From positions 186,001-250,000 of the IMG/VR virus record IMGVR_UViG_3300020810_001156: a stretch of DNA of 64,000 nt, one strand, 5' to 3'. Under the pieces are notes generated by a model. It worked only from the letters and a program-made list of their open reading frames with translations, was not told the origin of the DNA and ran no database searches. Shown here piece by piece: positions 45,694-58,602 of this stretch. Numbering within the stretch: position 1 is the stretch's first letter; each line of letters begins with the position of its first letter. The translations under genes were made by a program, and so were the position numbers.

Positions 45694-47034
45694 ATGATAA
45701 CACCCTTTTCGGTATTAGATACTCGAACAAAGGAATGGAAGAAAAAGAAAGAAGAGTGGATTGCTACCTACGGAATTCAATCTGAGTTAGGTAGGGAGGA
45801 TACCCAATCGAAAACCCAATTTTGGGATTCTCCAACTAACGTTTCTATTTTTGACCCGGTTCTTTGTGAAGTAATGTACGATTGGTTCGTACCGAAGGGT
45901 GGAAAAATCCTAGACCCATTTGCTGGTGGAAGTGTAAGAGGAATCGTAGCTGAAGAAATGGGGTACAAATATGTAGGTATCGACCTTTCTAAAAAACAAA
46001 TCCTTGCAAATCAAAAACAAAGTTCAAAACCCTTTTGGATTGATGGAGATGCTGATAAAGTTCTCTTTAATTTAGAAGGTGGATTCGATTTTGTATTTAC
46101 CTGCCCTCCTTATTATGATTTAGAAGTGTATTCGGATTCTCCTTATGATTTATCGAATATGAAAGAAAAACAATTTGATGATAAATTGGATTCTATCATT
46201 TATAAATCTGCTCTGAAGTTGAAAGAGAACCGATTTTTTGGGATTGTGGTAAGTGAGGTGAGAAATCCTTCAACGACTGGGAATTATTCCATAGGTAATT
46301 ATAGAGGATTGGTTTGGAAAACAATAAAGATGTGTGAATCACACGGATTGAAGTTCTATAATGATATGATATTATTCAATTCCCAACATCAGGCATCTCG
46401 AGTAGGTAAAACTTACTTTGAAAGAAATAGAAAAATACCATCAGTACATCAAAATGTATTGATATTTGTTAAGGGGAATCCCGATATTGCTACCGAAGAA
46501 ATCAAAGGTGGTGAGTTTGAATGTCAAGTAAAGGGTACAAAATACTTGACTTTCAGACACGCTGCTATTTCAATCGACCCAAACAAATTAGTTGCTTCTG
46601 AAGTTAAAAGAAGATGTGTAAGTAGAAAATCAAAATATAAAGATTGGCAGATAATTGGTGAGGAGACTCGACCAGAGATAAAATATGTTATAGGAGATAT
46701 TCCATTTGAATCACCTTTACAAGTTTTGGAAGTTATTCCTGAATTAACTGAATCACAATGTAGAAATTACTTTGAATCAAACTCTAAGAAGTTTCAACAT
46801 TGGAAAAGAGTGAATCCATCGGATTGGAATATATCTTATAAACAAATGGAGGATTTATGGAATTTATCTGATAAAGCAGGTGGAATAAGTATTTACTCCG
46901 AAACCATTCAATGTGGTGATAAAAAATTCATTTCAGTTAACGAAGCTGCAAAGGAATTTGGAATAAGTGGAGAACGAGTTAGACAAAAGTTAAGGTCTGA
47001 TAATTATAAAGACTGGAAATATTTGGATAATTAA
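45694..47034 (+). CDS. DNA amino-methyltransferase with C-terminal NUMOD1/HTH-like repeats
   Basis: LDPFAGG and TCPPY; three C-terminal repeats ending in K.W. Confidence 0.8.
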   Translation: MITPFSVLDTRTKEWKKKKEEWIATYGIQSELGREDTQSKTQFWDSPTNVSIFDPVLCEVMYDWFVPKGGKILDPFAGGSVRGIVAEEMGYKYVGIDLSKKQILANQKQSSKPFWIDGDADKVLFNLEGGFDFVFTCPPYYDLEVYSDSPYDLSNMKEKQFDDKLDSIIYKSALKLKENRFFGIVVSEVRNPSTTGNYSIGNYRGLVWKTIKMCESHGLKFYNDMILFNSQHQASRVGKTYFERNRKIPSVHQNVLIFVKGNPDIATEEIKGGEFECQVKGTKYLTFRHAAISIDPNKLVASEVKRRCVSRKSKYKDWQIIGEETRPEIKYVIGDIPFESPLQVLEVIPELTESQCRNYFESNSKKFQHWKRVNPSDWNISYKQMEDLWNLSDKAGGISIYSETIQCGDKKFISVNEAAKEFGISGERVRQKLRSDNYKDWKYLDN

Positions 47035-47053
47035 AATAAATTTCGTATATTTG
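47022..47053 (+). promoter_or_regulatory. Bacteroidota-type promoter
   Basis: TTTG-N20-TATATTTG; shares ATTTGGATAATTAAAA with the promoter at 1649. Confidence 0.8.
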
Positions 47054-47071
47054 TAAAATTAAACTAAAAAA

Positions 47072-49048
47072 ATGAAAAAAATATTGGTAATTATGTTGAG
47101 TATGGTGAGTATTTCCCTATCTGCTCAACAAAGTGATACGACTATCGTATTAGATGATGTAGTAATAACTGCTACTAGAAGTGAGATAAGTTTGGAAGAT
47201 TCACCCGTACCAACGGAAGTGATTGGAAAGAAAGAGATTGAAGAACTAAATTTAATTACGATGCAAGACCTCCTTAATTTAAAAGGATTTGTTGCACCGA
47301 TGAAAAGTGGAGGTTTCCAATTAAGAGGATTATCTTCCGAATATGTTTTAGTAATGATTGATGGAGTTCCAATCGCAGGTAGAGAAAGTGGTGCATTAGA
47401 TATCTCGAATATCAACCTTGCAAATGTGGAAAGAGTTGAAATTGTAAAAGGTTCAATGTCTGCACTTTGGGGTAACCATGCAATTGGTGGTGTAATCAAC
47501 ATCATTACAAAGAAGAGTGGAGAACCATCTATAATGTTGAATACACAATATGGAACAAACAACACATCATTAGTTGGATTAACTTCAACAGTGGGTAAAG
47601 ATAAATTTAAGAACATATCTAAGATTACATTAGGAAGTTCAGATGGTTTTGATATCGACCCATTAACTTATGGTCAAAATCAATTACCATTTAAGTTGTT
47701 GAATATTACCAATAGAACTACTTACGATGATGGAACGAACCAATACTCATTAGGATTAACTCACTTAGGAAAAACATCCGAAGGTGAAACTGTAACTGAA
47801 ACAAATACTCAGGGGCAATTAGTACCAGTTGATGAGGTAAACGAATCCCAAAACTTTATTGTTGATTTGAACTACAAAAGAAGTTTTGGTAAATATGTGA
47901 GTGAGATTAAAGTATCTAATTCAAACTTCAGTAACTCAAACAAATCTTCTTTTGAATATTTCGGACAACAAGTAGTTCAGTTAGATGAGAGTGACCAAAA
48001 CATTTTCCAACCTGAGATGATTAACAATTACAATTGGAATTCTAAAAACTCAACTACATTTGGATTTGGTTATAGAGGACACGATTACGATACTGAAAGA
48101 TATGGTGGTGATAAATCTCTAAACTCTTACTTTGGATATGTTCAACATTATCTAAACTTAGATAAACTAAATTTAGTAGTTGGTGGTAGATACGATAACT
48201 ATTCAGATTTTGGAAACAACTTCTCACCAAAAGTATCTGCAACTTATGATTTGGGGAAATTCAAATTGAGTTCATCGGTTGGTTATGGATTCAGAGTACC
48301 TGATTTTAGAACCTTATACATTAACTATGGTGGATTCTCATCTGGGTATTGGGTATTAGGTTCGTATAACATTGAAGAACAAATCAATTTTTATTCTCAA
48401 CAAAATCTAATTGCATTTGTATCTTATGGATTAGAAGATATTACTCAACTAAGTCCTGAAACTTCTATCTCATATGATTTTGGTGTATCGTATAAATTAA
48501 ATGAGAGTAGTAAAGTAGGATTAAACTTATTTAGAACCAATACAACTGATTTGATTGAATCAGTTCTTGCTGGAATGTTTGTAAACCAAACTTTACTTTT
48601 TGGATACACAAATATCTCAGAAGCAACATTTACAGGTTTAGAGTTTGAAACTTTGATTCAAAAAGATAGATTTAGATTTGATGGTTCTTATCAGTATTTA
48701 GAAACTGAAGCAAATAAAGCAGATGGAACTGAATTCTTTTTGGGTGAAAGACCTAAACATTTAGTTAACCTTGCAACTACTTATACATTGAAGAATGGTT
48801 TATCATTAACTTTAAATGGAGTTCATAAATCAGAGTACTTCTTTAGAGATGTTGATAGAAGTGGAACTCAGGACGCAAATGAGTTTGTACCTTCTCACAC
48901 ATTGTTGAATACTTTGATAAGTTCTCCTGTTGTTAAGAATATGACAGTTGGTGTTGGTGTTAACAATATTTTAGATTTTACTAATGTAGAGTATCTAAAA
49001 CAACAAAATGGTAGAACCATTTTTGGAAAAGTAACTTATAAATTTTAA
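47072..49048 (+). CDS. TonB-dependent outer-membrane receptor
   Basis: Signal peptide, TonB box LDDVVITATR, plug motif VERVEIVKG.MSALWG..AIGGVINIITK, GGRYD, and C-terminal VTYKF. Confidence 0.95.
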   Translation: MKKILVIMLSMVSISLSAQQSDTTIVLDDVVITATRSEISLEDSPVPTEVIGKKEIEELNLITMQDLLNLKGFVAPMKSGGFQLRGLSSEYVLVMIDGVPIAGRESGALDISNINLANVERVEIVKGSMSALWGNHAIGGVINIITKKSGEPSIMLNTQYGTNNTSLVGLTSTVGKDKFKNISKITLGSSDGFDIDPLTYGQNQLPFKLLNITNRTTYDDGTNQYSLGLTHLGKTSEGETVTETNTQGQLVPVDEVNESQNFIVDLNYKRSFGKYVSEIKVSNSNFSNSNKSSFEYFGQQVVQLDESDQNIFQPEMINNYNWNSKNSTTFGFGYRGHDYDTERYGGDKSLNSYFGYVQHYLNLDKLNLVVGGRYDNYSDFGNNFSPKVSATYDLGKFKLSSSVGYGFRVPDFRTLYINYGGFSSGYWVLGSYNIEEQINFYSQQNLIAFVSYGLEDITQLSPETSISYDFGVSYKLNESSKVGLNLFRTNTTDLIESVLAGMFVNQTLLFGYTNISEATFTGLEFETLIQKDRFRFDGSYQYLETEANKADGTEFFLGERPKHLVNLATTYTLKNGLSLTLNGVHKSEYFFRDVDRSGTQDANEFVPSHTLLNTLISSPVVKNMTVGVGVNNILDFTNVEYLKQQNGRTIFGKVTYKF

Positions 49049-49055
49049 AAACTAT

Positions 49056-50222
49056 ATGAAAAAGATGATTTTATGTGGATTGATGTTGCTGATGGGTACA
49101 TCATCTTTTGCTTCTCACCTATTGGGTGGGTACATTCAAACAACTCAAAGGAATTCAAGTGATACTGTTGATGTGGTAGTAACTTTATTTACTGACCCTC
49201 AAGGAATTGGTAATCCAACTTCTATTTCTTTAGCGGAATGGAAATTGGTAAATGGTTTTTATCAAACCAATGGTAACTTTACACTTTCTCAACAACTAAC
49301 TGGAAGTTGGCAAGGTGTAAATGTGTATGTGTATAGTGGTATTAGAATATTAAGTAGTGGTGATTATCGTTTCATCTACACCAATTGTTGTAGAGGAATG
49401 TTGAGTAACGCATCATCTGCAATGAATAGTAACTTTACTATTGCAATGGATTACAAAAAATCACTTCTACCAAACTCAGCACCTATCATTCTCAACCCAC
49501 TTCCAATCAATTGGGTAAATGGTGATACTGCACAATCAATTCTATTTGCGGTAGATGTAGATGGTGATTCGGTAATGGTTGAAAAGGATGATGCTATTAA
49601 CCAACACTCAAACAATACATTTGTACCACTTTCACCATTTACTCAATTAGGTAGTTATGGTAGTTATTATGTGGATGTAAATGGAACAATTGAATGGGCT
49701 CCAAATACCAATGGAACATTTGGTACTGGATATAAAGTAAGTGAAATCAGAAATGGACAAGTTATTGGAGTGAATAGAATTCAACAAGTCTATATGGTTC
49801 AACCTGGTTCAACACCAAATGTACCAAACTTAAACCCAATGATTACAGCCGATTTGGTAAATGGTGATTCACTTCAATATACCACATCCATTTCAAACGC
49901 AACTTCAACTGAGTTGATTATTCCAAATGTAGATGTAACTCAAACTTCAGATTCAACTTGGACTTTGAATAATCTTCAAATGGGAACATACAATGGAGTA
50001 TTGAGAGCTAGTAGTAACTCATCAAATATGGATTATTACATTACTTTAGTGGTAACATCTACAATCGGAATCGAAGAGAATGTTTCAGATATGGATACTT
50101 CTTACGAAGTTTACGATTGGACTGGAAAATACATTGGTAAAGATGTAAATTGGGAGCAATTAAATGGTTTGTATATAATTAAACATAGTAACGGAACAAT
50201 AGAAAAAATCTACAATATATGA
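49056..50222 (+). CDS. Secreted surface protein with a T9SS-like C-terminal domain
   Basis: Signal peptide ending ASH..GG, NCCR, NSAP; C-terminal IGIEE...VYDWTGK...GLYII....KI. Confidence 0.65.
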   Translation: MKKMILCGLMLLMGTSSFASHLLGGYIQTTQRNSSDTVDVVVTLFTDPQGIGNPTSISLAEWKLVNGFYQTNGNFTLSQQLTGSWQGVNVYVYSGIRILSSGDYRFIYTNCCRGMLSNASSAMNSNFTIAMDYKKSLLPNSAPIILNPLPINWVNGDTAQSILFAVDVDGDSVMVEKDDAINQHSNNTFVPLSPFTQLGSYGSYYVDVNGTIEWAPNTNGTFGTGYKVSEIRNGQVIGVNRIQQVYMVQPGSTPNVPNLNPMITADLVNGDSLQYTTSISNATSTELIIPNVDVTQTSDSTWTLNNLQMGTYNGVLRASSNSSNMDYYITLVVTSTIGIEENVSDMDTSYEVYDWTGKYIGKDVNWEQLNGLYIIKHSNGTIEKIYNI

Positions 50223-51076
50223 AGATATTAGTAACTGGCGGGAACGGCTTTATCGGTTCAAATCTAATTAAGAAACTATTATCTGAAGGACACGAAGTGG
50301 TATCTTTGGATGATTTATCAACTGGGTTAAAAGAGTACGAAGTTGAAGGATGTAATTATGTTTATGGAGATATTGAAAATCTTCTGTATTGGAAAGGTGA
50401 ATCTTTTGATTTATGTTATCATCTCGCTGCGTTAGCTAGAATCGTTCCATCATTTGAGGACCCGATGGAAACCTTTAGAGTAGACACTCAAGGTGTAATG
50501 GTAGTTGCTGAATGGGCTAGACAAAATAATGTAAAGGTTGTATATAGTGGTTCATCATCTCGTTGGTGTAATCCCGAAACTTCACCATATGCAACTTGTA
50601 AAAAATTAGGTGAAGATATTCTCAAAATGTATCGAACTGCTTATGGATGTGATTTTGAAATCGCAAGATTCTATAATGTATATGGACCAAATGAATTGGT
50701 TGATGGACAGTGGGCAGCTGTGATTGGTATTTGGAGAAAACAAATCGAAGAAGGTAAACCAATCACAATTATATCAGATGGAGAACAAAGAAGAGATTTT
50801 ACTCATGTAGATGATATTTGTGATGCTCTATATAAGATTGGTACAAGTGATAAAAAGCATGAAGATGCTTGGGAATTGGGTACAGGTATGAATTACTCAA
50901 TTAATGAAGTATTTGATTTCTTCCAAGAATCATTTGGTGATTTGGAAAAAGTACATCTGCCTGATGTACCAGGAAATTATAGACAAACTCTTAGAGAGAA
51001 TGATGATACTTTGGAGAGATTGGAATGGGCACCCAAAGATAGTTTAAGAGATTATATTTTATCTCTTAACAAGTAA
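50219..51076 (+). CDS. NAD-dependent epimerase/dehydratase
   Basis: TGGNGFIG, SSS, PYATCK, RFYNVYGP and RDFTHV.D. Confidence 0.92.
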   Translation: MKILVTGGNGFIGSNLIKKLLSEGHEVVSLDDLSTGLKEYEVEGCNYVYGDIENLLYWKGESFDLCYHLAALARIVPSFEDPMETFRVDTQGVMVVAEWARQNNVKVVYSGSSSRWCNPETSPYATCKKLGEDILKMYRTAYGCDFEIARFYNVYGPNELVDGQWAAVIGIWRKQIEEGKPITIISDGEQRRDFTHVDDICDALYKIGTSDKKHEDAWELGTGMNYSINEVFDFFQESFGDLEKVHLPDVPGNYRQTLRENDDTLERLEWAPKDSLRDYILSLNK

Positions 51077-51108
51077 AAAGAGGTTTAACGAATAAAATAT
51101 TATCGGTT

Positions 51109-51303
51109 ATGAAATATGGTATATTGTTTATCATTGTTATTTTATTTTCTGGTTTTTCACAAACTGAAAGTGAGTGGGAAAAGAAATACAACTCGGTGAA
51201 GGAAGAAAGAGATATGTACAAAAAGACATCAGAGATGTTGTTGAAAAATTGGAAAGAGTGTGAAGAAAAAGTAACAAAGATTATTAGTGAGCAAGTTAAT
51301 TAA
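51109..51303 (+). CDS. Small exported or membrane coiled-coil protein
   Basis: Hydrophobic N-terminus. Confidence 0.5.
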   Translation: MKYGILFIIVILFSGFSQTESEWEKKYNSVKEERDMYKKTSEMLLKNWKECEEKVTKIISEQVN

Positions 51304-51841
51304 TTTATTTGGAGGACCAGGCATAGGAAAATCAGGCATATCAGCTGGATTAACTTATGAATTAAAGAAAAGACATATTAGTTGTAATAACCCATATGAG
51401 TTTCCAAAGAGATTAGCATGGGATAACAACATACCAGCGATACAAGACCAATTGTATGTATTCGCTAACCAACATAGAGGAATCGCAGAATCCTTTGGTA
51501 AAGTAGATTATATCGTTATTGATTCACCAATTCTATTTTCTACAATTTATCACACATATTATACTGAAGGGTATCCTGCTGAGTTTTATGGTGAAGAGTT
51601 TCACAAATTTGTGATTCATCTTCACAAACAATACACAAGTATCAATATTCTTTTGGAAAGAGGTGATACAATTCACAATGATGATGAAAGATTCCAAAAT
51701 CTAAAACAATCATTGGAGATAGATGATTTGTGTAAAAAAATATTAAAAGATAATGATGAAACTTATCACACAATCAAAGTAGATGAGTTTACTGTTGAAA
51801 AGATTTTAACATTATTGGATTTAAATAATGAAAAAAGATAA
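51287..51841 (+). CDS. NadR/Ttd14-like P-loop kinase (AAA_28)
   Basis: INLFGGPGIGKS, E..K, DSP and R.Q. Confidence 0.8.
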   Translation: MSKLINLFGGPGIGKSGISAGLTYELKKRHISCNNPYEFPKRLAWDNNIPAIQDQLYVFANQHRGIAESFGKVDYIVIDSPILFSTIYHTYYTEGYPAEFYGEEFHKFVIHLHKQYTSINILLERGDTIHNDDERFQNLKQSLEIDDLCKKILKDNDETYHTIKVDEFTVEKILTLLDLNNEKR

Positions 51842-52037
51842 ACGCTGGAATAGGGAAATGAAAAGGTATCGTATCATTGAACACAAACATCGGGATAAAT
51901 CTGTGTTCATTGTTGAGTGGAATGATAGATGGTTTTTAGGATTGTGGGGAAGATGGCATGGTAAATTTCAGAGTTTAAAAATTGAAGAAGCTATTTCTAA
52001 AATACAAAGATTAGTACACATTAAAATAAATAAATGA
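51828..52037 (+). CDS. Hypothetical protein
   Basis: 69 aa, translationally coupled. Confidence 0.5.
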   Translation: MKKDKRWNREMKRYRIIEHKHRDKSVFIVEWNDRWFLGLWGRWHGKFQSLKIEEAISKIQRLVHIKINK

Positions 52038-52936
52038 GAATAGTAGTTACAGGCGGTTGTGGGTTTATTGGTTCATCTTTTGTAAATCTTATAAATAAAG
52101 TTCCAAATACTGAAATAGTTGTTATAGATAAATTAACCTATGCAGCTAATCCATTTTTAATTTCCAAAGATATACCTCTTATTAAAAAAGATATTTGTGA
52201 TATCACTTTAGATGATATTGGATATGCTGATTATATTGTAAACTTTGCTGCTGAATCTCATGTTGATAATTCAATCTCAAATGGATTACCTTTTGTGAAA
52301 ACTAATGTAGAAGGTACATTCAATATGTTAGAGGTTGCTAGAAAAATTCCTAACCTAAAGAAGTTCATTCAAATATCTACTGATGAGGTTTATGGTGATA
52401 TGGAAAGTAGAAATATTATGGAAGCTAATGAAAACACATCATTAGAACCATCCTCTTATTATTCAGCTACTAAAGCAGCAGCTGACCATTTAGTTGAATC
52501 TGCTGGTAGAACTTATGGTTTACCTTATTTAATTACGAGAACTTGTAACAATTATGGTGTAAATCAACACCACGAAAAATTCTTACCTACAATAGCTAAA
52601 TCAATCAAAGAAGATAAACCAATTCCTCTTTATGGAGATGGTAAACAAATGAGAGAGTGGATTTGGGTTGAAGATAATGTTCAATTGATTTATGATTTGA
52701 TGATATCACAAAACGGAATATGGAATATTGGTAGTGGAGATACTTGGACTAATAGAAGTATCGTTCAACAAATTGGAGTGATTCTAAATAAAAAAGTAAA
52801 GTTAGAGCATGTTGAAGATAGATTAGGACATGATAGAAGGTACTCAATAAATTTCAGTAAATTGATGCACTTCAAAAATAGCTATAACATAACCACAAAA
52901 AATTTAGAAAAATTTCTTACAGAAACATTTGGATAA
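52034..52936 (+). CDS. rfbB: dTDP-glucose 4,6-dehydratase
   Basis: GGCGFIG, DKLTYA, AAESHVD, STDEVYG, YSATK and RLGHD.RY. Confidence 0.93.
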   Translation: MRIVVTGGCGFIGSSFVNLINKVPNTEIVVIDKLTYAANPFLISKDIPLIKKDICDITLDDIGYADYIVNFAAESHVDNSISNGLPFVKTNVEGTFNMLEVARKIPNLKKFIQISTDEVYGDMESRNIMEANENTSLEPSSYYSATKAAADHLVESAGRTYGLPYLITRTCNNYGVNQHHEKFLPTIAKSIKEDKPIPLYGDGKQMREWIWVEDNVQLIYDLMISQNGIWNIGSGDTWTNRSIVQQIGVILNKKVKLEHVEDRLGHDRRYSINFSKLMHFKNSYNITTKNLEKFLTETFG

Positions 52937-52970
52937 TTCAAATATTTTTCTTATATTAGAGTTGTAATTG
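52928..52970 (+). promoter_or_regulatory. Bacteroidota-type promoter with the early-class downstream element
   Basis: TTTG-N20-TATATTAG followed by ..GTAATTG, as at 41142. Confidence 0.75.
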
Positions 52971-52985
52971 TAAAAAGACCTTAAT

Positions 52986-53327
52986 ATGAGTAAAGTAATT
53001 GGAACAAAGTACGGAATTGAGATTACCAAACCTTGGAATCAAAAGATGTACGATTGGAACGAATTAGTTGGAAAGCTAATTAAAATTGATTTGTATAATA
53101 AATTAGAAGAGTTCTACAAAAAAGGTGATAAAGCTGGTATGAACAAAATTGCTAATTCATTCGGACCTTCTTATGGTGATGGTTATGATATTGATGCAGT
53201 ATTCGATGGTGTATTTGAAGATATTGCACAACTTCAAAATTATCAAATCAATGAAGAGTTGGAATACTTAGTAAAAGATGGATTAGTTAAAGAACCAAAG
53301 TACGGATTTGTTGGATACGATAAATAA
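52986..53327 (+). CDS. Hypothetical protein
   Basis: 113 aa, directly after the promoter. Confidence 0.65.
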   Translation: MSKVIGTKYGIEITKPWNQKMYDWNELVGKLIKIDLYNKLEEFYKKGDKAGMNKIANSFGPSYGDGYDIDAVFDGVFEDIAQLQNYQINEELEYLVKDGLVKEPKYGFVGYDK

Positions 53328-53332
53328 AAGTT

Positions 53333-53542
53333 ATGAGTTTAAGAGATACAGTAAAAGATTGGTTAAAGGAGGGTAAAGAAATTAAAGCTCCAAATCCTCT
53401 TTGTTCGAAAAGATTGGTTATTAAAAATCTAAATCAGATTCAACAACTATTGGAAGAAGATTCTCCAATGATTGCAAAAATGAGAATAGAGATGTTGATA
53501 TCTGATATTGAAAATGGTAAATTAAACGCAGGAGAACTATAA
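53333..53542 (+). CDS. Hypothetical protein
   Basis: 69-aa ORF. Confidence 0.55.
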   Translation: MSLRDTVKDWLKEGKEIKAPNPLCSKRLVIKNLNQIQQLLEEDSPMIAKMRIEMLISDIENGKLNAGEL

Positions 53543-53544
53543 GA

Positions 53545-53694
53545 GTGGAATATCTAATTTACATCGGCTTATACTTGTTTATAACTGGTTCAATAATATT
53601 TTGGGCAGTAATAAACGCACCAATGGTTGATGATGATTATAAAATTATAGAAGAATCAAAATGGCAAAAATGGAAAAAACGGAGAAAAAAGTAA
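53545..53694 (+). CDS. Small membrane protein (49 aa, GTG start, not in the ORF track)
   Basis: TM helix, NAP, basic tail. Confidence 0.4.
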   Translation: MEYLIYIGLYLFITGSIIFWAVINAPMVDDDYKIIEESKWQKWKKRRKK

Positions 53695-53834
53695 GACAGT
53701 ATAGAAGTAGACAAGGTAGAAGTGATAAACAATATGAATCATCTATGAAGGCAATGACTTATGGCTGTGGTTTATTTTTAGTTATTCTTATAGTTTATGG
53801 TATTGTAAATACACTTATGAATGTATTGGGTTAA
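53661..53834 (+). CDS. Small membrane protein (57 aa, not in the ORF track)
   Basis: RQYRSRQGRS.KQ plus a C-terminal TM helix. Confidence 0.45.
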   Translation: MAKMEKTEKKVRQYRSRQGRSDKQYESSMKAMTYGCGLFLVILIVYGIVNTLMNVLG

Positions 53835-54318
53835 ACGAAAAATCCAACAAATCAAAAGGGTGATTGATTTTTTCCCTTTAATTTGGAATGGGTTTGATTT
53901 TGATTATCGTTATGCATTAGACCTTTTCAAAAAACAATTGGAAAGGCAAGTTAAGTTTATGGAATCCGATAGAGCAATGACTTTAGAGGCTAAAAACAAT
54001 GCTAATAAAATCAAAACTGCAATCCAATTGATGGATAAAGTTTATGATGGGGAATATGCAATGGAGTATCATTCTACAATAGATAAACTCTATGGAACAA
54101 CACATTATGATTTTGAAGAATTGGATAAGTTAGATGAAAATGGAGAACCTTTGTATCGAATGAAACTTTGGAATGAGAATGCAGTTGATGATTCTCATCA
54201 GAAAGAGATTGATGAGGTTCGAACCGAAATGATGTTATTAGGTAGAGATAAACAAAGGAGAGCACATAAACTACTTTGGGATTTTATAGAACATAATATA
54301 CAAAGATGGTGGGATTGA
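53821..54318 (+). CDS. Hypothetical protein
   Basis: P.IW...DFDY; C-terminal WWD. Confidence 0.7.
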   Translation: MYWVKRKIQQIKRVIDFFPLIWNGFDFDYRYALDLFKKQLERQVKFMESDRAMTLEAKNNANKIKTAIQLMDKVYDGEYAMEYHSTIDKLYGTTHYDFEELDKLDENGEPLYRMKLWNENAVDDSHQKEIDEVRTEMMLLGRDKQRRAHKLLWDFIEHNIQRWWD

Positions 54319-54319
54319 T

Positions 54320-54538
54320 ATGGGAAATATGAATAGTCAATTACCTGTTGTGGTGGTTCACAAAGGGCCTCGTAAAAACTCTAAAATACATTTAGAGGTC
54401 TTTGAAAATACCAGAGTTGATGATATTATATCAACAACAAAAAGGAAACCTCTGATACCAAAGGATAATGAAATATTAGACTTAGGTGTTGGTGAAAGTT
54501 TCATTGAAAAATATAAACACAAACATAAATTAAAATAA
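54320..54538 (+). CDS. Hypothetical protein
   Basis: 72-aa ORF. Confidence 0.55.
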   Translation: MGNMNSQLPVVVVHKGPRKNSKIHLEVFENTRVDDIISTTKRKPLIPKDNEILDLGVGESFIEKYKHKHKLK

Positions 54539-54545
54539 AAGTATT

Positions 54546-55127
54546 GTGAAAAACCTAATAGTAATAGGACATCCTAACAAAGATTCATTTTGCTATAATG
54601 GTATTATGAAAACCATTAAACGGGAACTTCGTAAACACAATGAACCAATCAAAGTTATTGATTTGTATAGAGATTCCTTTGCGAGACCAAGAACCGATTT
54701 GGTTAAAAGATATCAAGAATTAGTAACTTGGTCAGATAGAATTTATTTTATCTCACCAGTTTGGTGGTTTAGATTAACTCCACGAATGGAAGTATTCTTT
54801 GATGAAGTATTCACACCAGGATTTGCTTATAACTTTGTAAACATTACAAAATTATATGCTTATCCTAAACCACATTTAAGTGATAAAAAAGTTAGAACTT
54901 ATATCACACATGGAGCACCTTCATTACCAGTTAGAACTTTGTATCTTAACTCAGTCAAACTAAGATTGGTGTTGGGTGTATTTACTTTTGTATTTGGTTG
55001 GAAGTTGGGTAGATGGAGAAAAACTAAACAATTTTGGTCAGTACCATTTGTATCTGATGAAAAGAGAAGAAAGTACTTACAACGAGTTAAAAAAGATGTT
55101 AGAAAAGATTTAAAGTTTGAAATATGA
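54546..55127 (+). CDS. Flavodoxin-like NAD(P)H-dependent oxidoreductase (Flavodoxin_2)
   Basis: GHPN..SF, IDLY, PVWWF...P....FFD.VF.PGFAY. Confidence 0.85.
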   Translation: MKNLIVIGHPNKDSFCYNGIMKTIKRELRKHNEPIKVIDLYRDSFARPRTDLVKRYQELVTWSDRIYFISPVWWFRLTPRMEVFFDEVFTPGFAYNFVNITKLYAYPKPHLSDKKVRTYITHGAPSLPVRTLYLNSVKLRLVLGVFTFVFGWKLGRWRKTKQFWSVPFVSDEKRRKYLQRVKKDVRKDLKFEI

Positions 55128-55489
55128 TAGGTGGAGTACAACCAAAAGTATTACTAACTCAAGATGAGGATGGTAATTTGAAATTAGATGAAAACTTTAA
55201 GGAAATGATTTATGGTGACCCAAAAATGAATTGGAAATTGGTTAGAGAAAGAGATGGATTAACCAAAGAATCCAATGGTATTATGTGGATTGAATTCAAT
55301 GAAGAAGGAAGAGGTAAATCGAAACACGAAGAACCAGCAATTGGTAGAAGTTTAATCATGTCTCCATTCAATGATTTCTTTACTTGGCAAACCACTACAA
55401 TCACCGAAATTGTGGAACAAACTAATAATTATATTAAGTTCAAAACAATGAACTCTAACTACGAATTATTTAAATTAGAAAATGAGTAA
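55124..55489 (+). CDS. Hypothetical protein
   Basis: 121 aa; WQTT.ITEI...F.T.NS.Y. Confidence 0.65.
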   Translation: MIGGVQPKVLLTQDEDGNLKLDENFKEMIYGDPKMNWKLVRERDGLTKESNGIMWIEFNEEGRGKSKHEEPAIGRSLIMSPFNDFFTWQTTTITEIVEQTNNYIKFKTMNSNYELFKLENE

Positions 55490-56156
55490 AAAGACTTGTG
55501 TTTTATTATCAGGTCAGTTAAGAGAAGCTACCCATTATTATAAAAACATTAAGAAAAATCTTATTGATGTTTATAACGCTGATGTTTTTATTTCTACTTG
55601 GGAAAATTCTGGTAGAGATTGTTCAATCGAAGATGTGGTTGATTTATATAAACCAATAGCTTATGAAGTTGAAAATGAAAATCTTCAATTTTTAAAACAA
55701 ATGGTTTCCCCATATGAGTGGAGAAAGCCAGATACAGCTACTGATTCAGTATCAACATTTGCTATGTTCTATAAAATATTGAGAGTACATAGATTAAAAC
55801 ATATCCACGATAGTATGCGATTGGATAAATATGATACTGTAATTAGATGTAGATTTGATTTAGAAATAAATTCTCCTATTACATTGATAGAACCAAAAGA
55901 AAATACACTATACATTCCAAAAGGATGGGATTGGCATAAAGGTTATAATGATTTATTTGCATTAGGTGATTCTAAAGTTATGAATTACTATTCAAATATA
56001 TTCTATCATTTATTGGGGTTATTGGATGAAGGTTATATGTTACATCCAGAATATTTATTAAAAACATATTTAGATAAATCAGTATTTAATATAGAAAGAC
56101 CATTAATGGATATATCATTATTAGGTAGAAAAATATTTGAACACGGAGTCAATTAA
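55482..56156 (+). CDS. Putative glycan transferase (WavE-related family)
   Basis: LLSGQLR, DVFISTWE, YDTVIRCRFD, NDLFALG and HPE. Confidence 0.55.
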   Translation: MSKKTCVLLSGQLREATHYYKNIKKNLIDVYNADVFISTWENSGRDCSIEDVVDLYKPIAYEVENENLQFLKQMVSPYEWRKPDTATDSVSTFAMFYKILRVHRLKHIHDSMRLDKYDTVIRCRFDLEINSPITLIEPKENTLYIPKGWDWHKGYNDLFALGDSKVMNYYSNIFYHLLGLLDEGYMLHPEYLLKTYLDKSVFNIERPLMDISLLGRKIFEHGVN

Positions 56157-56168
56157 AAACAAAAACAA

Positions 56169-56996
56169 ATGAGTAACATAGAAAAACAATATCAAGGTAT
56201 CCTCAGAAAGTTGGTACTTTATGGAAAAGAAAAGGGAGATAGAACTGGAACTGGAACTCTATCTTACTTTGGGGAACAAATCAGACACAATATGGCTGAT
56301 GGATTTCCACTTCTTACTACAAAGAAGATGGCTATTAAATCTGTAATGACTGAACTAAAATGGTTTCTAAAAGGAAGAACTGATATCCAATATTTGAGAG
56401 ATAATAATTGTAAAATTTGGGATGGTGATTATGAAAAGAGTGGTAGAACCGATGGAACATTAGGGCCAATCTATGGTAAGCAATGGAGAGATTGGGATGG
56501 TAGACAAGAACGGGATGGTTCTTATGATATGAGCCTTGACCAAATTGCTAATCTGATATTTCTATTGAAAAGAAATCCAGACTCAAGGCGTTTAATGGTT
56601 AATGCTTGGAATGTAGGTGAGTTAAATGAAATGGTTCTACCACCTTGCCACTACGGATTCCAATGTTATGTATCTGAAGGTAAACTATCTCTAATGTGGA
56701 ATCAGAGAAGTGTAGATACGTTCTTAGGTTTACCATTTAACATTGCAAGTTATGGAACACTACTCCTTTTATTATGTGAAGAGACAGGGTTACAACCTGG
56801 TGAACTGATTGGGAACTTAGGTGATGTACATTTATATAAGAATCACATTCAACAAGCAAAAGAACAAATTGTAAGAGAACCATATAAGTTACCAACTATT
56901 GAACTTTCAAATGTGGATATACTTAAAGGAGAGTTCGATTACGAAATCAAAGATTATGAATATCACCCAAGTATAAAGGCACCATTAAGTAACTAA
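56169..56996 (+). CDS. thyA: Thymidylate synthase
   Basis: DRTGTGT, FPLLTTKK, GPIYG.QWR, LPPCH, QRSVD.FLG.PFN and H.Y.NH. Confidence 0.98.
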   Translation: MSNIEKQYQGILRKLVLYGKEKGDRTGTGTLSYFGEQIRHNMADGFPLLTTKKMAIKSVMTELKWFLKGRTDIQYLRDNNCKIWDGDYEKSGRTDGTLGPIYGKQWRDWDGRQERDGSYDMSLDQIANLIFLLKRNPDSRRLMVNAWNVGELNEMVLPPCHYGFQCYVSEGKLSLMWNQRSVDTFLGLPFNIASYGTLLLLLCEETGLQPGELIGNLGDVHLYKNHIQQAKEQIVREPYKLPTIELSNVDILKGEFDYEIKDYEYHPSIKAPLSN

Positions 56997-56997
56997 T

Positions 56998-57210
56998 ATG
57001 GGTTTAGAACTAAAATCAATTGATGATAATAATATAGAGGTTTACTCTAATTTAAAATTGGCAGGAACTATTATAAGACCAGAAATACCTACTCATCCTG
57101 ATGGAACCTTTAAGTGGTTCTTTAAACCCAATAAAGATTGTGGTTGTGTTTGGACAGATGTAAGTTTATTAGAATTGGGAACTATAATTAAAAAGATGAA
57201 TCAAAAATGA
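56998..57210 (+). CDS. Hypothetical protein
   Basis: 70-aa ORF. Confidence 0.5.
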   Translation: MGLELKSIDDNNIEVYSNLKLAGTIIRPEIPTHPDGTFKWFFKPNKDCGCVWTDVSLLELGTIIKKMNQK

Positions 57211-57389
57211 AAAAATTCAAAAGAAGTAAATTAAATAGAAAATTAAGTGGAATTTGTGGAGGATTGGGTGATTACTTTGATACTGACCCATTACTTTGGA
57301 GATTATTATTTGTATTACTATTCTTTATCCCCGCAATTCCAATTTTTATTCTATACATCATAACAACATTAATAACTGAATCCGAATGA
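57207..57389 (+). CDS. PspC-domain membrane protein
   Basis: RS...RKLSGICGGLG.YF..DP...RL. Confidence 0.88.
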   Translation: MKKFKRSKLNRKLSGICGGLGDYFDTDPLLWRLLFVLLFFIPAIPIFILYIITTLITESE

Positions 57390-57901
57390 AACCATTAAAA
57401 GAAGCAACGCACGATAAACACAAAGAGGCTGAAAGAATGTTGTTCAACACTAAAATGTTCAAAGGTGAATTAAGTGTAGAACAATATACAAAGTATCTTC
57501 TTTCACAATTAGAAATCTTCTCAACTATTGAAGAAAACTTTGAAATGCCACACAATGGATTGAGAAGAAAAGAAGCAGTTATGAAAGATTTAAAAGGAAT
57601 GGGTGTAAGACAATTAGAAATCTCAGACCCTGCTACTTTAAATTATACTACATATCTGAGAGGATTATCACAAGAGGATATTAATCCACATATTTATCTT
57701 AACTATCTTGCGATTATGTTTGGTGGACAGATGATGAAAAAAAATACACCCGGTCCTGGTAATATGTATGATTTCGATAACATGATGGAGTCAATGCAAT
57801 CAGTTAGAAATATACAAAAAGATGAGTGGGCAGATGAAGTGAATCGTGGATTTGATTTTATGATTGATATATTTAAAGAGTTAGAAAAATGTATAAACTA
57901 A
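57386..57901 (+). CDS. Heme oxygenase (biliverdin-producing)
   Basis: LKEAT...H..AE carrying the proximal His; H.Y..YLA.MFGGQ distal helix; E....F. Confidence 0.9.
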   Translation: MKPLKEATHDKHKEAERMLFNTKMFKGELSVEQYTKYLLSQLEIFSTIEENFEMPHNGLRRKEAVMKDLKGMGVRQLEISDPATLNYTTYLRGLSQEDINPHIYLNYLAIMFGGQMMKKNTPGPGNMYDFDNMMESMQSVRNIQKDEWADEVNRGFDFMIDIFKELEKCIN

Positions 57902-58560
57902 AAGATAGAATATTCCATCATTCAGAAAAGTTCAAAAATCTAATTGAACAACAAGAGGGTGTTCAGTTAATTGATACTGATGATTATGGTTGGGAAAACT
58001 ATCGTTATGAAAATGATAGATTCAGACTTGCCCATGTTGAACGATATTCTCATATGGGATTGGAGGTTGTACACATAACTTGTTTTCCAAGAGAAAACTC
58101 AAAGATGCCTGTTTTTGGATTTGATGTAGTTGGATATCAAAACGATGAAAAAGAAATGTCAAAAATTAGTGGAGTGTTTATTGATTGGTCACCAATCTTA
58201 ACTCACGATAAATGGCACGATACTCAATGGAACAAAGATAGAAAGTTACCTTATTGGGCAACTGTATTTTCAGAAGATTTTATAGCAGTAAGACCTACTG
58301 AAGATGAATACGAAAAAGTATTCGAAGTTGGGTTTGATGCATTCGAAAGATGGTTAGAAAGATTAAATACCGATGAGGATTTAACTGATGATGTAAGTGA
58401 GATTGAACAAATTATTGAAAGGCAAAACACTTATTGTGAACATCAAGCATCAAACAAACGAACAATGGGTGCTTTAACTGCTAACATTGGAGAGGAAAAA
58501 GCAAGACATTTTATGACAGAAGTTCTATTCCCTAAGATAAAAACTGACAATTTGTCATAA
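57889..58560 (+). CDS. Ferredoxin-dependent bilin reductase (PcyA/PcyX family)
   Basis: FR.AHVE, H...FP, PVFGFDVV, D.SP, R.LP.W..VFS, Q..YC..Q..N..T and FM..VLF. Confidence 0.9.
   Translation: MYKLKDRIFHHSEKFKNLIEQQEGVQLIDTDDYGWENYRYENDRFRLAHVERYSHMGLEVVHITCFPRENSKMPVFGFDVVGYQNDEKEMSKISGVFIDWSPILTHDKWHDTQWNKDRKLPYWATVFSEDFIAVRPTEDEYEKVFEVGFDAFERWLERLNTDEDLTDDVSEIEQIIERQNTYCEHQASNKRTMGALTANIGEEKARHFMTEVLFPKIKTDNLS
58545..58557. promoter_or_regulatory. Palindromic putative operator TGACA-N3-TGTCA
   Basis: Perfect inverted repeat 13 nt upstream of the -33 box of the groESL-region promoter. Confidence 0.4.
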
Positions 58561-58570
58561 TTGAGGATTA

Positions 58571-58602
58571 TTTGGAATTGTGGAATAAATTTCGTATATT
58601 AG
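58571..58602 (+). promoter_or_regulatory. Bacteroidota-type promoter
   Basis: TTTG-N20-TATATTAG. Confidence 0.75.

What the first reader, a model, noticed from the sequence alone, without database searches (positions are those of the whole stretch)
47072..58560. Possible phage heme-piracy pathway: TonB receptor, heme oxygenase and bilin reductase
Seen: a complete promoter-led TonB-dependent receptor, and 8 kb downstream an overlapping heme oxygenase / bilin reductase pair, in a phage with Bacteroidota signals and no photosynthesis genes in the window. Known: heme oxygenase releases iron and biliverdin, and HO-FDBR cassettes are described in cyanophages (pebS, pcyA) and in pcyX phages. The receptor resembles, from memory, flavobacterial HmuY-associated receptors (unverified). 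Inference: infected cells import heme, free the iron for phage replication and reduce the biliverdin. The receptor may instead serve superinfection exclusion or carry another ligand such as B12.
Basis: partly seen in the sequence, partly recalled or inferred. Interest (0 to 1): 0.72.

Follow-up and report, generated by a model that had tools for sequence, protein, structure and literature searches.

The report
Jumbo phage haem receptor plus haem-oxygenase cassette
A 253-kb phage of Bacteroidota carries, in one promoter-bounded gene block, a complete outer-membrane receptor related to bacterial haem importers and a haem oxygenase/bilin reductase pair; the genes are real, conserved and found in RNA libraries, but that they work together to steal haem iron is plausible and unproven.

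Summary
Window 47072-49048 encodes a complete TonB-dependent receptor (TBDR1) led by a Bacteroidota-type promoter. 57386-57901 and 57889-58560 encode an overlapping haem-oxygenase-fold protein and a ferredoxin-dependent bilin reductase (FDBR).

The window is part of a 252.6-kb jumbo phage from salt marsh, probably infecting Bacteroidota.

For the haem idea:
- TBDR1's nearest cellular relatives (34% identity or less) are Bacteroidota receptors almost always followed by an HmuY haemophore gene, the HfpR/HfpY arrangement proven to take up haem.
- More distant relatives sit beside CbiK/CbiX chelatase-like genes, so a tetrapyrrole ligand is likely.
- TBDR1 is the first gene and HO-FDBR the last two of one promoter-to-promoter block.
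- All three genes are under purifying selection and occur in metatranscriptomes.

Against an obligate pathway:
- A syntenic relative keeps HO-FDBR but lacks TBDR1.
- Other jumbo phages carry a receptor but no HO.
- The phage encodes no HmuY, TonB or ferredoxin.
- The HO has lost the distal Gly-Asp motif kept by 66 of 69 other phage HOs.
- The placement of TBDR1 in the tree is not statistically secure.

The FDBR carries the PcyA triad (Glu/His/Asp), not the PcyX Asp, so phycocyanobilin is the likelier product.

Verdict: a new variant of known kinds; the haem-piracy reading is partly supported.

The parts
47022..47053 (+). Bacteroidota-type promoter (-33 TTTG, -7 TATATTTG) of a phage promoter class, heading the block
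   Evidence: Sequence read and pattern matches. There are 14 genome copies, all on the + strand, 13 of them intergenic. The same motif sits at the same junction in relatives, including the one that lacks TBDR1.
47072..49048 (+). TBDR1: complete TonB-dependent outer-membrane receptor (658 aa), a distant HmuR/HfpR-like relative
   Evidence: Pfam Plug and barrel domains; signal peptide, TonB box and C-terminal Phe. More than 120 phage clusters at 70-95% identity; nearest cellular proteins 28-34% identical. Relatives are HmuY-linked; tree. dN/dS 0.15-0.20. The plug is 76% invariant.
49056..50222 (+). ORF388: secreted surface protein of three Ig-like beta-sandwich domains plus a small C-terminal domain (possibly a T9SS sorting domain); an accessory insertion
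   Evidence: Signal peptide; Atlas neighbours are Bacteroidota T9SS cargo proteins. AF2 model pLDDT 81.5; Foldseek finds Ig/adhesin and gliding-motility CTD proteins, nothing HmuY-like. No HMM support for a CTD. Absent in relatives L009, L011-L014 and G006. Depth 2-3 times that of TBDR1 in four RNA libraries.
50219..51076 (+). NAD-dependent sugar epimerase/dehydratase (block member)
   Evidence: Pfam Epimerase 2e-44; conserved in all relatives directly after the promoter or TBDR1.
52034..52936 (+). Second NAD-dependent epimerase/dehydratase (block member)
   Evidence: Pfam Epimerase 3e-53.
54546..55127 (+). Flavodoxin_2-family NAD(P)H oxidoreductase; a possible electron source for HO/FDBR (inference only)
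   Evidence: Pfam PF02525 6e-21; conserved in TBDR1-bearing relatives but not found in G006.
56169..56996 (+). Thymidylate synthase ThyA (block member)
   Evidence: Pfam 7e-95.
57207..57389 (+). PspC-domain membrane protein, immediately upstream of HO and overlapping it
   Evidence: Pfam PspC 2e-18.
57386..57901 (+). Compact haem-oxygenase-fold protein (171 aa) with the proximal His but an altered distal helix (AIMFGGQ)
   Evidence: Pfam; alignment to HO-1 and other HOs. AF2 model pLDDT 91.9, TM 0.85 to rat HO-1. Motif survey of 69 phage HOs. dN/dS 0.15.
57889..58560 (+). Ferredoxin-dependent bilin reductase of the PcyA/PcyX (AX) lineage carrying the PcyA triad Glu51/His62/Asp79
   Evidence: Pfam. 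Best solved relative is PcyX 5OWG, E 1e-19. Best cultured-phage relative is Pelagibacter phage Mosig, 31%. Residue survey of 80 phage FDBRs. Triad rule from PMC13446030. dN/dS 0.12-0.15.
58591..58602 (+). Next copy (1 mismatch) of the promoter core, closing the block right after the FDBR
   Evidence: An exact copy sits at the equivalent place in relative G006.
60828..60856 (+). First strong terminator-like hairpin downstream, after GroES/GroEL

Best explanation
The region 47022-58560 is one promoter-bounded block of auxiliary genes in a jumbo phage that infects Bacteroidota. Its first gene and its last two genes most likely form a loosely coupled tetrapyrrole (haem) supply-and-breakdown module.

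Shown:
- TBDR1 is a complete, conserved TonB-dependent receptor of Bacteroidota ancestry.
- Its closest cellular relatives are the receptor halves of receptor-HmuY haem systems.
- The HO-fold protein and the FDBR are an overlapping pair taken from the phage HO-PcyX gene pool, not from the host.
- All three genes are under purifying selection and are present in RNA libraries.

Inferred mechanism:
1. Host RNA polymerase reads the block from the host-type promoter.
2. TBDR1 is exported, inserted into the outer membrane and energised by the host TonB-ExbBD.
3. It brings free haem, or haem handed over by the host's own HmuY-like haemophore, into the periplasm. Host transporters carry it further.
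4. The HO-fold enzyme opens haem to biliverdin, releasing iron. Iron-demanding phage enzymes such as the di-iron ribonucleotide reductase subunit could use it.
5. The FDBR, which has the PcyA triad, reduces biliverdin, probably to phycocyanobilin. This would remove the HO product and keep the reaction turning over.

The coupling is facultative. Relatives run HO-FDBR without the receptor.
For: Gene identities.

TBDR1 family:
- The best cellular hits are all Bacteroidota or Rhodothermota.
- HmuY lies directly downstream in 4 of 5 contexts read and in 30 of 32 strong genome hits.
- One locus also has HemS/ChuX upstream.
- HfpR-(DoxX)-HfpY is proven to take up haem, and the hfpY deletion mutant still grew on free haemin whereas the hfpR mutant did not (PMC9331221).
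- The tree places the phage clade sister to an HmuY-linked receptor (SH-aLRT 93).
- The non-HmuY relatives sit next to CbiK/CbiX or FecCD/periplasmic-binding genes, so the wider family also handles tetrapyrroles or iron complexes.

Signs of a working transporter: the TonB box is kept and the plug is the most conserved part of the protein.

Block structure: no promoter-core copy lies between 47042 and 58591, and the same bounds hold in G006.

Expression: metatranscriptomes hold 47-73% of the sampled TBDR1 words and up to 49% of the HO-FDBR words, including DNase-treated libraries. RNA contigs cover TBDR1.

Selection: dN/dS 0.12-0.20.

HO: the fold is complete and the proximal His is present.

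FDBR: the catalytic His and Asp are invariant in 80 phage FDBRs.

New capability for the likely host family: HO in 16 of 201 and FDBR in 0 of 201 Flavobacteriaceae genomes sampled.

Iron sink: a di-iron RNR subunit is encoded in the genome.

No AlaS or ferrochelatase is present, so substrate is not supplied by synthesis as in AlaS-HemO-PcyX phages (PMC11480375).
Against: - G006, a syntenic relative, keeps HO (69%) and FDBR (77%) but has no TBDR1 at the same junction.
- Jumbo phages G001 and G002 have a receptor but no HO.
- PcyX-type contigs and the pelagiphage Mosig carry HO-FDBR without a receptor.
- Co-occurrence is confined to one clade.
- TBDR1 is at most 34% identical to any cellular receptor. 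It is far below the curated thresholds (TonB-hemin 140 against 317, TonB-B12 161 against 600).
- It has no His and no NPNL between FRVP and the PE motif.
- The AU test does not reject placing it with the non-HmuY receptors (p = 0.082).
- No HmuY, TonB, ExbB, ferredoxin or inner-membrane haem transporter was found in the phage.
- The HO has Ala-Ile in place of the distal Gly-Asp, alone among 69 phage HOs. From the HO-1 and HmuO literature as I recall it, hydrophobic substitutions of that Asp cripple oxygenase activity.
- RNA-library presence comes from assembled contigs and does not exclude DNA carry-over.
- The block also holds unrelated genes (epimerases, ThyA), so a shared promoter is weak evidence of a shared function.
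Confidence: 0.38

Rival explanations
1. Envelope remodelling. TBDR1 is one of several phage-encoded surface proteins, alongside the second receptor TBDR2, the Ig-like surface protein ORF388, sugar epimerases, glycosyltransferases and PspC. Together they change the infected cell's surface, for example to block superinfection, mask or replace a phage receptor, or stabilise the envelope. Transport is irrelevant, and HO-FDBR is an independent cassette that happens to lie in the same block.
For: - TBDR1 and ORF388 are presence/absence morons at one junction, directly after a promoter.
- The genome has two unrelated receptors, 25% identical in the plug only.
- TBDR2 is even more conserved. Other jumbo phages without HO also carry a single receptor, which matches TBDR1 only in the plug.
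- The block and window are rich in envelope and glycan genes.
[quoted passage not shown] It proposes that they modify the receptor landscape (10.64898/2026.10.24.761521).
- HO-FDBR persists without TBDR1.
Against: - A decoy or mask does not need an intact TonB box or a nearly invariant plug.
- TBDR1's ancestry is specifically in haem/tetrapyrrole uptake loci.
- The preprint gives no direct evidence for exclusion by any phage receptor.
Confidence: 0.28
2. TBDR1 is a working importer, but for another ligand such as a corrinoid (B12), a siderophore or another metal chelate. It serves a need unrelated to HO-FDBR.
For: - The best NCBIfam model is TonB-B12 (161 bits), slightly above TonB-hemin (140 bits).
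- More distant relatives are linked to CbiK/CbiX.
- A CobT-like/AAA (CobS-like) pair lies 5 kb upstream.
- The haem-receptor His/NPNL motif is absent.
- The nearest cellular relative's locus also contains copper-chaperone genes.
- The AU test is not significant.
Against: - Both NCBIfam scores are far below their cut-offs, and the nearest HmuY-linked relatives give the same ambiguous pattern.
- The strongest similarity (E 1e-55 to 1e-76) is to HmuY-linked receptors, against 1e-43 or weaker for the others.
- HfpR, a proven haem receptor, also conserves the motifs only partly.
- No CobN is present in the phage.
Confidence: 0.17
3. The purpose of HO-FDBR is the bilin rather than the iron. A PcyA-type product (phycocyanobilin) would serve a host or phage bilin-binding sensor, or act as an antioxidant. 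Alternatively, the altered HO-fold protein has a non-canonical role such as haem binding or detoxification. This can hold whether or not TBDR1 imports haem.
For: - The FDBR is kept under strong constraint (dN/dS 0.12-0.15), although iron release needs only HO.
- This clade switched to the PcyA Glu (4 of 80 FDBRs).
- A phage PcyA was shown to supply a phytochrome chromophore (PMC11480375).
- Some Flavobacteriaceae have HO genes.
- The distal pocket of the HO is changed in the whole clade.
Against: - No phycobiliprotein or BBAG-like gene was found in the phage.
- FDBR was not found in 201 Flavobacteriaceae genomes, so a dedicated host acceptor is not evident.
- No bilin acceptor has been identified for any heterotroph-infecting phage.
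Confidence: 0.25

Closest known systems
HfpR-HfpY of Flavobacterium psychrophilum and HmuR-HmuY of Porphyromonas gingivalis (Bacteroidota haem uptake: TonB-dependent receptor plus HmuY-family haemophore)
   Same: TBDR1 has the same domain layout. Its best cellular relatives are receptors with an HmuY gene directly downstream, the HfpR-HfpY gene order.
   Different: Identity is 34% or less. The phage has no HmuY partner. The FRAP/NxxL/His motif is not conserved. The gene is phage-encoded and driven by a phage promoter rather than iron-regulated. Transport has not been tested.
hemO-pcyX (and alaS-hemO-pcyA/X) cassettes of marine and freshwater phages (Ledermann et al. 2016, 2018, as cited in the papers read; PMC11480375)
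   Same: An overlapping HO-FDBR pair in a non-cyanobacterial phage. The best solved relative of the FDBR is PcyX, PDB 5OWG, and the HO is closest to those phage HOs. An iron-supply role has already been discussed for them.
   Different: The host phylum is Bacteroidota rather than Alphaproteobacteria, SAR11 or cyanobacteria. The FDBR has the PcyA Glu instead of the PcyX Asp. The HO is shorter (171 aa against a median of 191) and lacks the distal Gly-Asp. There is no alaS. A receptor heads the same block.
Beta-barrel outer-membrane proteins of huge phages, including the Lak-phage TonB-dependent receptor (preprint 10.64898/2026.10.24.761521)
   Same: A TonB-dependent receptor (a 22-stranded class in that survey) encoded by a phage over 200 kb with a Bacteroidota host, next to envelope-related genes and present in metatranscriptomes.
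   Different: That survey proposes receptor-landscape effects, assigns no ligand and does not mention haem. Here the receptor's ancestry points to haem-uptake loci, and it shares a block with haem-degrading enzymes.
PcyA (phycocyanobilin:ferredoxin oxidoreductase)
   Same: The catalytic triad Glu/His/Asp is present at the aligned positions.
   Different: The score is below the NCBIfam PcyA equivalog cut-off (92.9 against 206). By sequence it is closer to PcyX. The product has not been determined.

Membership tests
TonB-dependent receptor (generic) | Plug domain followed by a full beta-barrel domain | tested here: met
   PF07715 76 bits (cut-off 23.9), profile positions 2-107 of 107. PF00593 123 bits (cut-off 27), positions 15-436 of 436.
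TonB-dependent receptor (generic) | Signal peptide, N-terminal TonB box, C-terminal aromatic residue | tested here: met
   The translation shows the N-terminal signal, DDVVITA and a terminal Phe. The TonB-box residues are conserved across 23 clade members.
Haem/haemoglobin TonB-dependent receptors (TIGR01785; HmuR/HfpR type) | Score above the curated family cut-off | tested here: not met
   140.5 bits against a cut-off of 316.85. The HmuY-linked cellular relatives also fail it, at 118-169 bits.
Haem/haemoglobin TonB-dependent receptors (TIGR01785; HmuR/HfpR type) | FRAP / NxxL boxes with a His in loop L7 | tested here: not met
   FRVP is present, but there is no His and no NPNL before the PE motif. 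This is only weakly diagnostic, because the proven receptor HfpR conserves these motifs only partly.
Haem/haemoglobin TonB-dependent receptors (TIGR01785; HmuR/HfpR type) | Adjacent HmuY-family haemophore gene | tested here: not met
   There is no PF14064 match anywhere in the phage genome, even at E <= 1. The downstream ORF388 is Ig-like, not HmuY-like. The feature is met in the nearest cellular relatives.
Haem/haemoglobin TonB-dependent receptors (TIGR01785; HmuR/HfpR type) | Phylogenetic placement inside the HmuY-linked receptor group | tested here: inconclusive
   Sister to an HmuY-linked receptor, SH-aLRT 93, on a long stem of 1.28. The AU test of the alternative placement gives p = 0.082.
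Haem/haemoglobin TonB-dependent receptors (TIGR01785; HmuR/HfpR type) | TonB-dependent haem transport | not testable with these tools
   This needs uptake or growth assays.
BtuB vitamin B12 receptor (TIGR01779 / NF007926) | Score above the equivalog cut-off | tested here: not met
   161.4 bits against 599.7, and 104.9 against 836.
Canonical haem oxygenase (PF01126) | Family score and complete HO fold | tested here: met
   48.5 bits against a cut-off of 23. AF2 model pLDDT 91.9, TM 0.84-0.85 to rat HO-1.
Canonical haem oxygenase (PF01126) | Proximal His ligand | tested here: met
   His12 aligns with the proximal His of HO-1 and is invariant in 31 phage HOs.
Canonical haem oxygenase (PF01126) | Distal-helix G-D-x-x-G-G motif (HO-1 Gly139/Asp140/Gly143/Gly144) | tested here: not met
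   The motif reads AIMFGG. Only the Gly-Gly is kept. 66 of 69 other phage HOs have GDLxGG.
Canonical haem oxygenase (PF01126) | Conversion of haem to biliverdin | not testable with these tools
   The haem-complex prediction was not run by the tool, so it gives no evidence either way.
PcyX (phage phycoerythrobilin synthase) | Asp at the position of PcyA Glu76 (PcyX Asp55), plus the His/Asp pair | tested here: not met
   Glu51 is at that position; His62 and Asp79 are present. 76 of 80 phage FDBRs have Asp, and only this clade has Glu. The rule is taken from PMC13446030.
PcyA (phycocyanobilin:ferredoxin oxidoreductase) | Catalytic triad Glu76/His88/Asp105 | tested here: met
   Aligned Glu51/His62/Asp79.
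PcyA (phycocyanobilin:ferredoxin oxidoreductase) | Equivalog score; product is phycocyanobilin | tested here: not met
   NF002760 scores 92.9 bits against a cut-off of 206. Product identity cannot be tested with these tools.

The most novel reading that the evidence does not exclude
A virus encodes both ends of a nutrient-theft route. Its own outer-membrane haem importer is installed in the infected cell's envelope. Its own cytoplasmic haem-opening and bilin-reducing enzymes free the iron for phage replication. Here import replaces the AlaS-based haem synthesis seen in other HO-FDBR phages. This would be the first case of a phage-encoded TonB-dependent transporter shown to feed a phage-encoded catabolic pathway.
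Probability: 0.25. Interest if true: 0.8.

Novelty: new variant of a known kind. Interest (0 to 1): 0.58.

Why it matters
The role of HO-FDBR cassettes in phages of non-photosynthetic bacteria is openly called enigmatic (PMC11480375). The function of the many outer-membrane beta-barrels in huge phages is also unknown (2026 preprint).

This clade is a natural test bed for both questions:
- It carries a receptor with haem-uptake ancestry and an HO-FDBR pair in one promoter-bounded block.
- Relatives exist that lack the receptor.
- It is abundant and appears in RNA libraries from salt marshes.

If the link holds, phages would redirect external haem iron during infection of Bacteroidota. That would bear on iron and haem cycling in coastal waters and on how phages overcome iron limits on replication.

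Two sequence-level surprises can be tested on the bench straight away:
- an HO without the distal Asp;
- a PcyA-type triad in a phage FDBR of the PcyX lineage.

Tried and rejected
- Single-protein pattern scans for TBDR1 found nothing in the genome collection and only 2 loci in the viral collection. Alignment-based scans were needed.
- The search of cultured phages for TBDR1 returned only host-DNA contamination or short plug matches. No cultured phage has a similar receptor.
- NCBIfam could not separate haem, B12 and siderophore receptor types for TBDR1 or for its relatives.
- I tested whether ORF388 is a haemophore or a BtuG-like partner. It has no sequence similarity to any gene flanking the cellular receptors and its fold is Ig-like, so that idea was rejected.
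- Its T9SS sorting domain has no HMM support and stays tentative.
- The homologue search with TBDR2, meant to identify the host, returned only a large phage clade.
- The haem-complex prediction for the HO was not folded by the tool and gives no evidence.
- The AU test did not reach significance.
- I looked for other tetrapyrrole, iron and energising genes in the genome. Ferredoxin, TonB, ExbB, HmuY, ferrochelatase, CobN, AlaS, phycobiliprotein and the photosystem reaction centre were all absent.
- A cyanophage origin was rejected on the promoter type, the taxonomy of relatives and the absence of photosynthesis genes.

Full report
**What the window is.** The window is bases 186001-250000 of a 252,603-bp IMG/VR virus record that CheckV rates complete.
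- G+C is about 32%.
- 272 of 280 simple ORF calls lie on one strand.
- It encodes a phage DNA polymerase, tail-fibre-like proteins and many auxiliary genes.
- DNA and RNA libraries holding the sequence come from salt marsh, with weaker matches in marsh, freshwater and marine samples.

**Checking the observation.**
- TBDR1 (47072-49048, 658 aa) has full-length Plug and barrel domains above the Pfam cut-offs. It also has a signal peptide, a DDVVITA TonB box and a C-terminal Phe.
- The HO-like gene (57386-57901, 171 aa) and the FDBR (57889-58560, 223 aa) pass their Pfam cut-offs and overlap by 13 nt.

'Promoter-led' is also correct.
- TTTG-N20-TATATTTG at 47022-47053 fits the Bacteroidota -33/-7 layout.
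- Its extended core TTCGTATNTTTG occurs 14 times in the genome. All copies are on the coding strand and none on the other. 13 are outside ORF bodies, and most end 5-41 nt before the next start codon.
- In the window, 15 matches with up to 1 mismatch were found against 2.35 expected by chance.

**Host.** Three lines point to Bacteroidota.
- The promoter type (above).
- A second receptor elsewhere in the genome (G000:C1:20180-22900, minus strand, 906 aa) carries the CarboxypepD_reg N-terminal domain. That domain is frequent in the receptors of the flavobacterium studied in PMC9331221.
- TBDR1's best cellular relatives are nearly all Bacteroidota: Flavobacteriaceae, Chitinophagaceae, Cytophagales and Saprospiraceae, plus Rhodothermota.

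The protein after TBDR1 resembles Bacteroidota T9SS cargo by language-model features and by fold. No HMM detects a sorting domain in it, so I treat that as tentative.

**What kind of receptor TBDR1 is.**
- It belongs to a large phage clade: more than 120 protein clusters at 70-95% identity, on contigs up to 267 kb.
- In an exhaustive search of 1.84 billion representatives, the next best proteins are only 28-34% identical.
- Curated models cannot name it. TonB-B12 scores 161 bits (cut-off 600) and TonB-hemin 140 bits (cut-off 317). The nearest cellular relatives give the same ambiguous pattern.

Genomic context is more telling.
- In 4 of 5 contexts read for the top cellular hits, an HmuY-family gene follows the receptor directly. 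One locus also has HemS/ChuX upstream.
- In the genome collection, 30 of 32 genes directly downstream of the strong hits are Pfam HmuY.
- With an HMM built from those genes, 44 of 74 loci have an HmuY-like gene within 3 kb. The loci without one are mostly the weak hits.
- Receptor-then-HmuY is the order of the Flavobacterium psychrophilum hfpR-(doxX)-hfpY operon, which is required for growth on haem and haemoglobin. There the hfpY mutant still grew normally on free haemin, whereas the hfpR mutant did not (PMC9331221).
- The weaker, non-HmuY relatives are followed by CbiK/CbiX chelatase-like genes or FecCD/periplasmic-binding genes. The wider neighbourhood of this receptor family is therefore also tetrapyrrole or iron-complex uptake.

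A maximum-likelihood tree puts the four phage sequences on a long stem (1.28). They are sister to an HmuY-linked receptor (SH-aLRT 93), on the HmuY-rich side of the tree. An AU test does not reject forcing them to the other side (log-likelihood difference 22.6, p = 0.082).

The classical haem-receptor motif (FRAP, a His, NPNL) is not conserved: FRVP is present, but no His and no NPNL. HfpR itself conserves these only partly, so this is weak evidence against.

My reading: TBDR1 descends from the HmuR/HfpR-like group and probably carries a tetrapyrrole, most likely haem. Membership is not established and the ligand is untested.

**Is it a working transporter?**
- Among 23 clade members the plug is 76% invariant against 46% for the barrel, and the TonB-box residues are kept.
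- dN/dS is 0.15-0.20.
- This fits a gated, TonB-energised transporter better than a passive surface decoy, though plugs are conserved in all such receptors.
- The phage encodes no TonB, ExbB or HmuY. It must rely on the host for energy, for any haemophore, and for transport across the inner membrane.

**The HO-FDBR pair.** The FDBR's best solved relative is the phage enzyme PcyX (PDB 5OWG, E 1e-19). Its best cultured-phage relative is Pelagibacter phage Mosig (31%), where a haem oxygenase gene likewise overlaps it upstream.

More than 125 IMG/VR stretches encode such FDBRs, and HO sits next to the FDBR in 69 of the 80 loci kept. Against that background this clade is an outlier in two ways.
- 76 of 80 phage FDBRs have Asp at the PcyX Asp55 position. 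Only this clade's four have Glu, giving the full PcyA triad Glu/His/Asp. That triad is essential for phycocyanobilin synthesis, whereas PcyX has Asp there and makes phycoerythrobilin (PMC13446030). A freshwater phage enzyme lacking the PcyX Asp was shown to be a true PcyA (PMC11480375). Phycocyanobilin is therefore the likelier product here.
- 66 of 69 phage HOs carry the distal-helix GDLxGGQ motif and have a median length of 191 aa. Only this clade has AIMFGGQ and 170-172 aa.

The predicted HO fold is nevertheless complete and confident (pLDDT 91.9, TM 0.85 to rat HO-1), and the proximal His is invariant. As I recall the HO-1 and HmuO mutant literature, hydrophobic replacement of that Asp impairs oxygen activation. 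Catalytic competence is therefore an open question.

Both genes are constrained (dN/dS 0.12-0.15).

The pair comes from the phage gene pool, not the host.
- The HO matches other phage HOs at 27-30% identity and gives no hit to flavobacterial HOs.
- PF01126 occurs in 16 of 201 Flavobacteriaceae genomes sampled.
- PF05996 occurs in none of the 201.

**Are the receptor and the enzymes linked?**

For a link:
- No copy of the promoter core lies between the one before TBDR1 (47042) and a one-mismatch copy just after the FDBR stop (58591).
- The first strong terminator-like hairpin comes later, after GroEL.
- The same bounds hold in a relative. TBDR1 is thus the first gene and HO-FDBR the last two of one promoter-to-promoter block.
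- Close relatives with TBDR1 all keep HO-FDBR in the same order.
- Metatranscriptomes hold 47-73% of the sampled TBDR1 words. They hold up to 49% of the HO-FDBR words, including in DNase-treated libraries.
- RNA contigs cover TBDR1 at depth 2-6 and ORF388 at depth 9-14 in four libraries.
- The phage encodes a di-iron ribonucleotide reductase subunit that could use the iron.
- Unlike AlaS-HemO-PcyX phages, it has no haem-synthesis gene. Import would be a logical alternative source of substrate.

Against a link:
- The co-occurrence is within one clade and is not independent evidence.
- Contig G006 (71 kb) is syntenic gene for gene. In it the methyltransferase is followed directly by the epimerase, with the same promoter between them. 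It has no TBDR1, ORF388 or Flavodoxin_2 gene, yet it keeps HO (69%) and FDBR (77%).
- Two other jumbo phage contigs (232 kb and 298 kb) carry one receptor each, which matches TBDR1 only in the plug, and no HO.
- Twelve longer PcyX-type contigs carry no receptor, although all are fragments.
- The block also contains epimerases, thymidylate synthase and unknown genes, so a shared promoter is weak functional evidence.
- The RNA evidence rests on assembled contigs and does not exclude DNA carry-over.

**ORF388.** The gene after TBDR1 is not a haemophore.
- It has a signal peptide and three Ig-like beta-sandwich domains plus a small C-terminal domain.
- Its structural neighbours are adhesin-like and gliding-motility C-terminal-domain proteins.
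- It has no similarity to genes flanking the cellular receptors.
- It is an insertion absent from the other relatives examined.

Together with TBDR2, the sugar-modifying enzymes and PspC, it feeds the rival view that these are envelope-remodelling genes. A 2026 preprint proposed such a role for huge-phage outer-membrane proteins.

**Verdict.** The gene identities and the block architecture are solid. The haem-piracy reading is the best single explanation, at about 0.38 confidence, and the coupling would be facultative. The rivals are:
- envelope remodelling or superinfection exclusion (0.28);
- a different ligand (0.17);
- a bilin-centred or non-canonical role for HO-FDBR (0.25).

These scores need not sum to one, because the last rival can hold alongside any of the others.

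**Comparison with what is known.**
- HO-FDBR cassettes in phages of heterotrophs, and the iron-supply idea, are already published.
- Receptors in huge phages were reported in October 2026 without a ligand.
- No paper in the searchable library combines haem oxygenase, a TonB-dependent receptor and viral auxiliary genes.

New here:
- the Bacteroidota host;
- the receptor's haem-uptake ancestry;
- its position in the same promoter block as HO-FDBR;
- the PcyA-type triad;
- the altered HO;
- natural relatives that lack the receptor.

I rate this a new variant of known kinds.

Noticed in passing
outside the window: G000:C1:20180-22900 (- strand); locus L002:1357-4077: A second, unrelated TonB-dependent receptor (906 aa; CarboxypepD_reg + Plug + barrel), one of only 8 minus-strand ORFs. 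It has its own very large phage clade at 85-97% identity. Two other jumbo phage contigs that lack HO (232 kb and 298 kb) each carry a single 803-810 aa receptor. Its ligand and role are unknown.
   Followed up: partly
window 49056-50222: ORF388 family. Across 34 homologues the start of the mature protein (Ala-Ser-His-Leu-x-Gly-Gly right after the signal peptide), an Asn-Cys-Cys-Arg motif and an Asp-x-Asp-Gly-Asp-Ser motif are invariant or nearly so. That pattern might indicate a metal site with an N-terminal His. It has the highest depth of the genes laid on RNA libraries. Many homologues sit on 1.2-3 kb contigs.
   Followed up: partly
window 1649-1680, 5350-5381, 16939-16969, 32035-32066, 33793-33824, 42990-43021, 47022-47053 (and 7 more in the genome): A phage promoter class with the Bacteroidota -33 TTTG and an extended -7 box TTCGTAT(A/C)TTTG. 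There are 14 exact copies, all on the coding strand. It could be used to map early or middle transcription units and to predict hosts for related phages.
   Followed up: partly
window 38975-41125 and 41239-42450: A CobT-like vWA protein (716 aa, weak Pfam VWA/CobT_C) followed by an AAA+ MoxR/CobS-like ATPase (AAA_5 + CbbQ_C; PHROG 'porphyrin biosynthesis'). No CobN is present in the genome. The pair is conserved at 79-94% identity in relatives. Its function next to the tetrapyrrole-related genes is unexplained.
   Followed up: partly
loci L012-L014 (relatives) against window 56998-57389: Relatives carry a serine hydroxymethyltransferase gene between ThyA and HO. This phage has a 70-aa ORF and a PspC-domain gene there instead.
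   Followed up: no
L012:20485-20901 against L013:20495-21172: Two contigs carry the identical TBDR1 protein. In one the FDBR gene is called at only 138 aa with no Pfam hit; in the other it is intact at 225 aa. This could be a natural truncation or an assembly error.
   Followed up: no
window 45694-47034: A DNA methyltransferase (N6_N4_Mtase) with a weak I-TevI-like DNA-binding match at its C-terminus lies directly upstream of the TBDR1 promoter. A non-specific endonuclease gene precedes it at 45051-45674.
   Followed up: no
window 58881-60800: A phage-encoded GroES/GroEL pair immediately follows the HO-FDBR block, behind its own promoter-like copy. A strong terminator-like hairpin follows at 60828-60856.
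   Followed up: no
L003:4367-5960 (cellular locus of the nearest relative P0123): The nearest cellular receptor-HmuY pair lies beside SCO1/SenC, PCuAC-like (LpqE-like) and DUF411 genes and a cation-efflux gene. That is a copper-handling neighbourhood, which may be coincidence or a hint of a different metal link.
   Followed up: no
window 47021-47055 (read laying loose ends): In two of the four RNA libraries, contigs match only the promoter segment and continue into other sequence on both sides. Other copies of the repeated promoter element elsewhere in this or related genomes would explain this.
   Followed up: no
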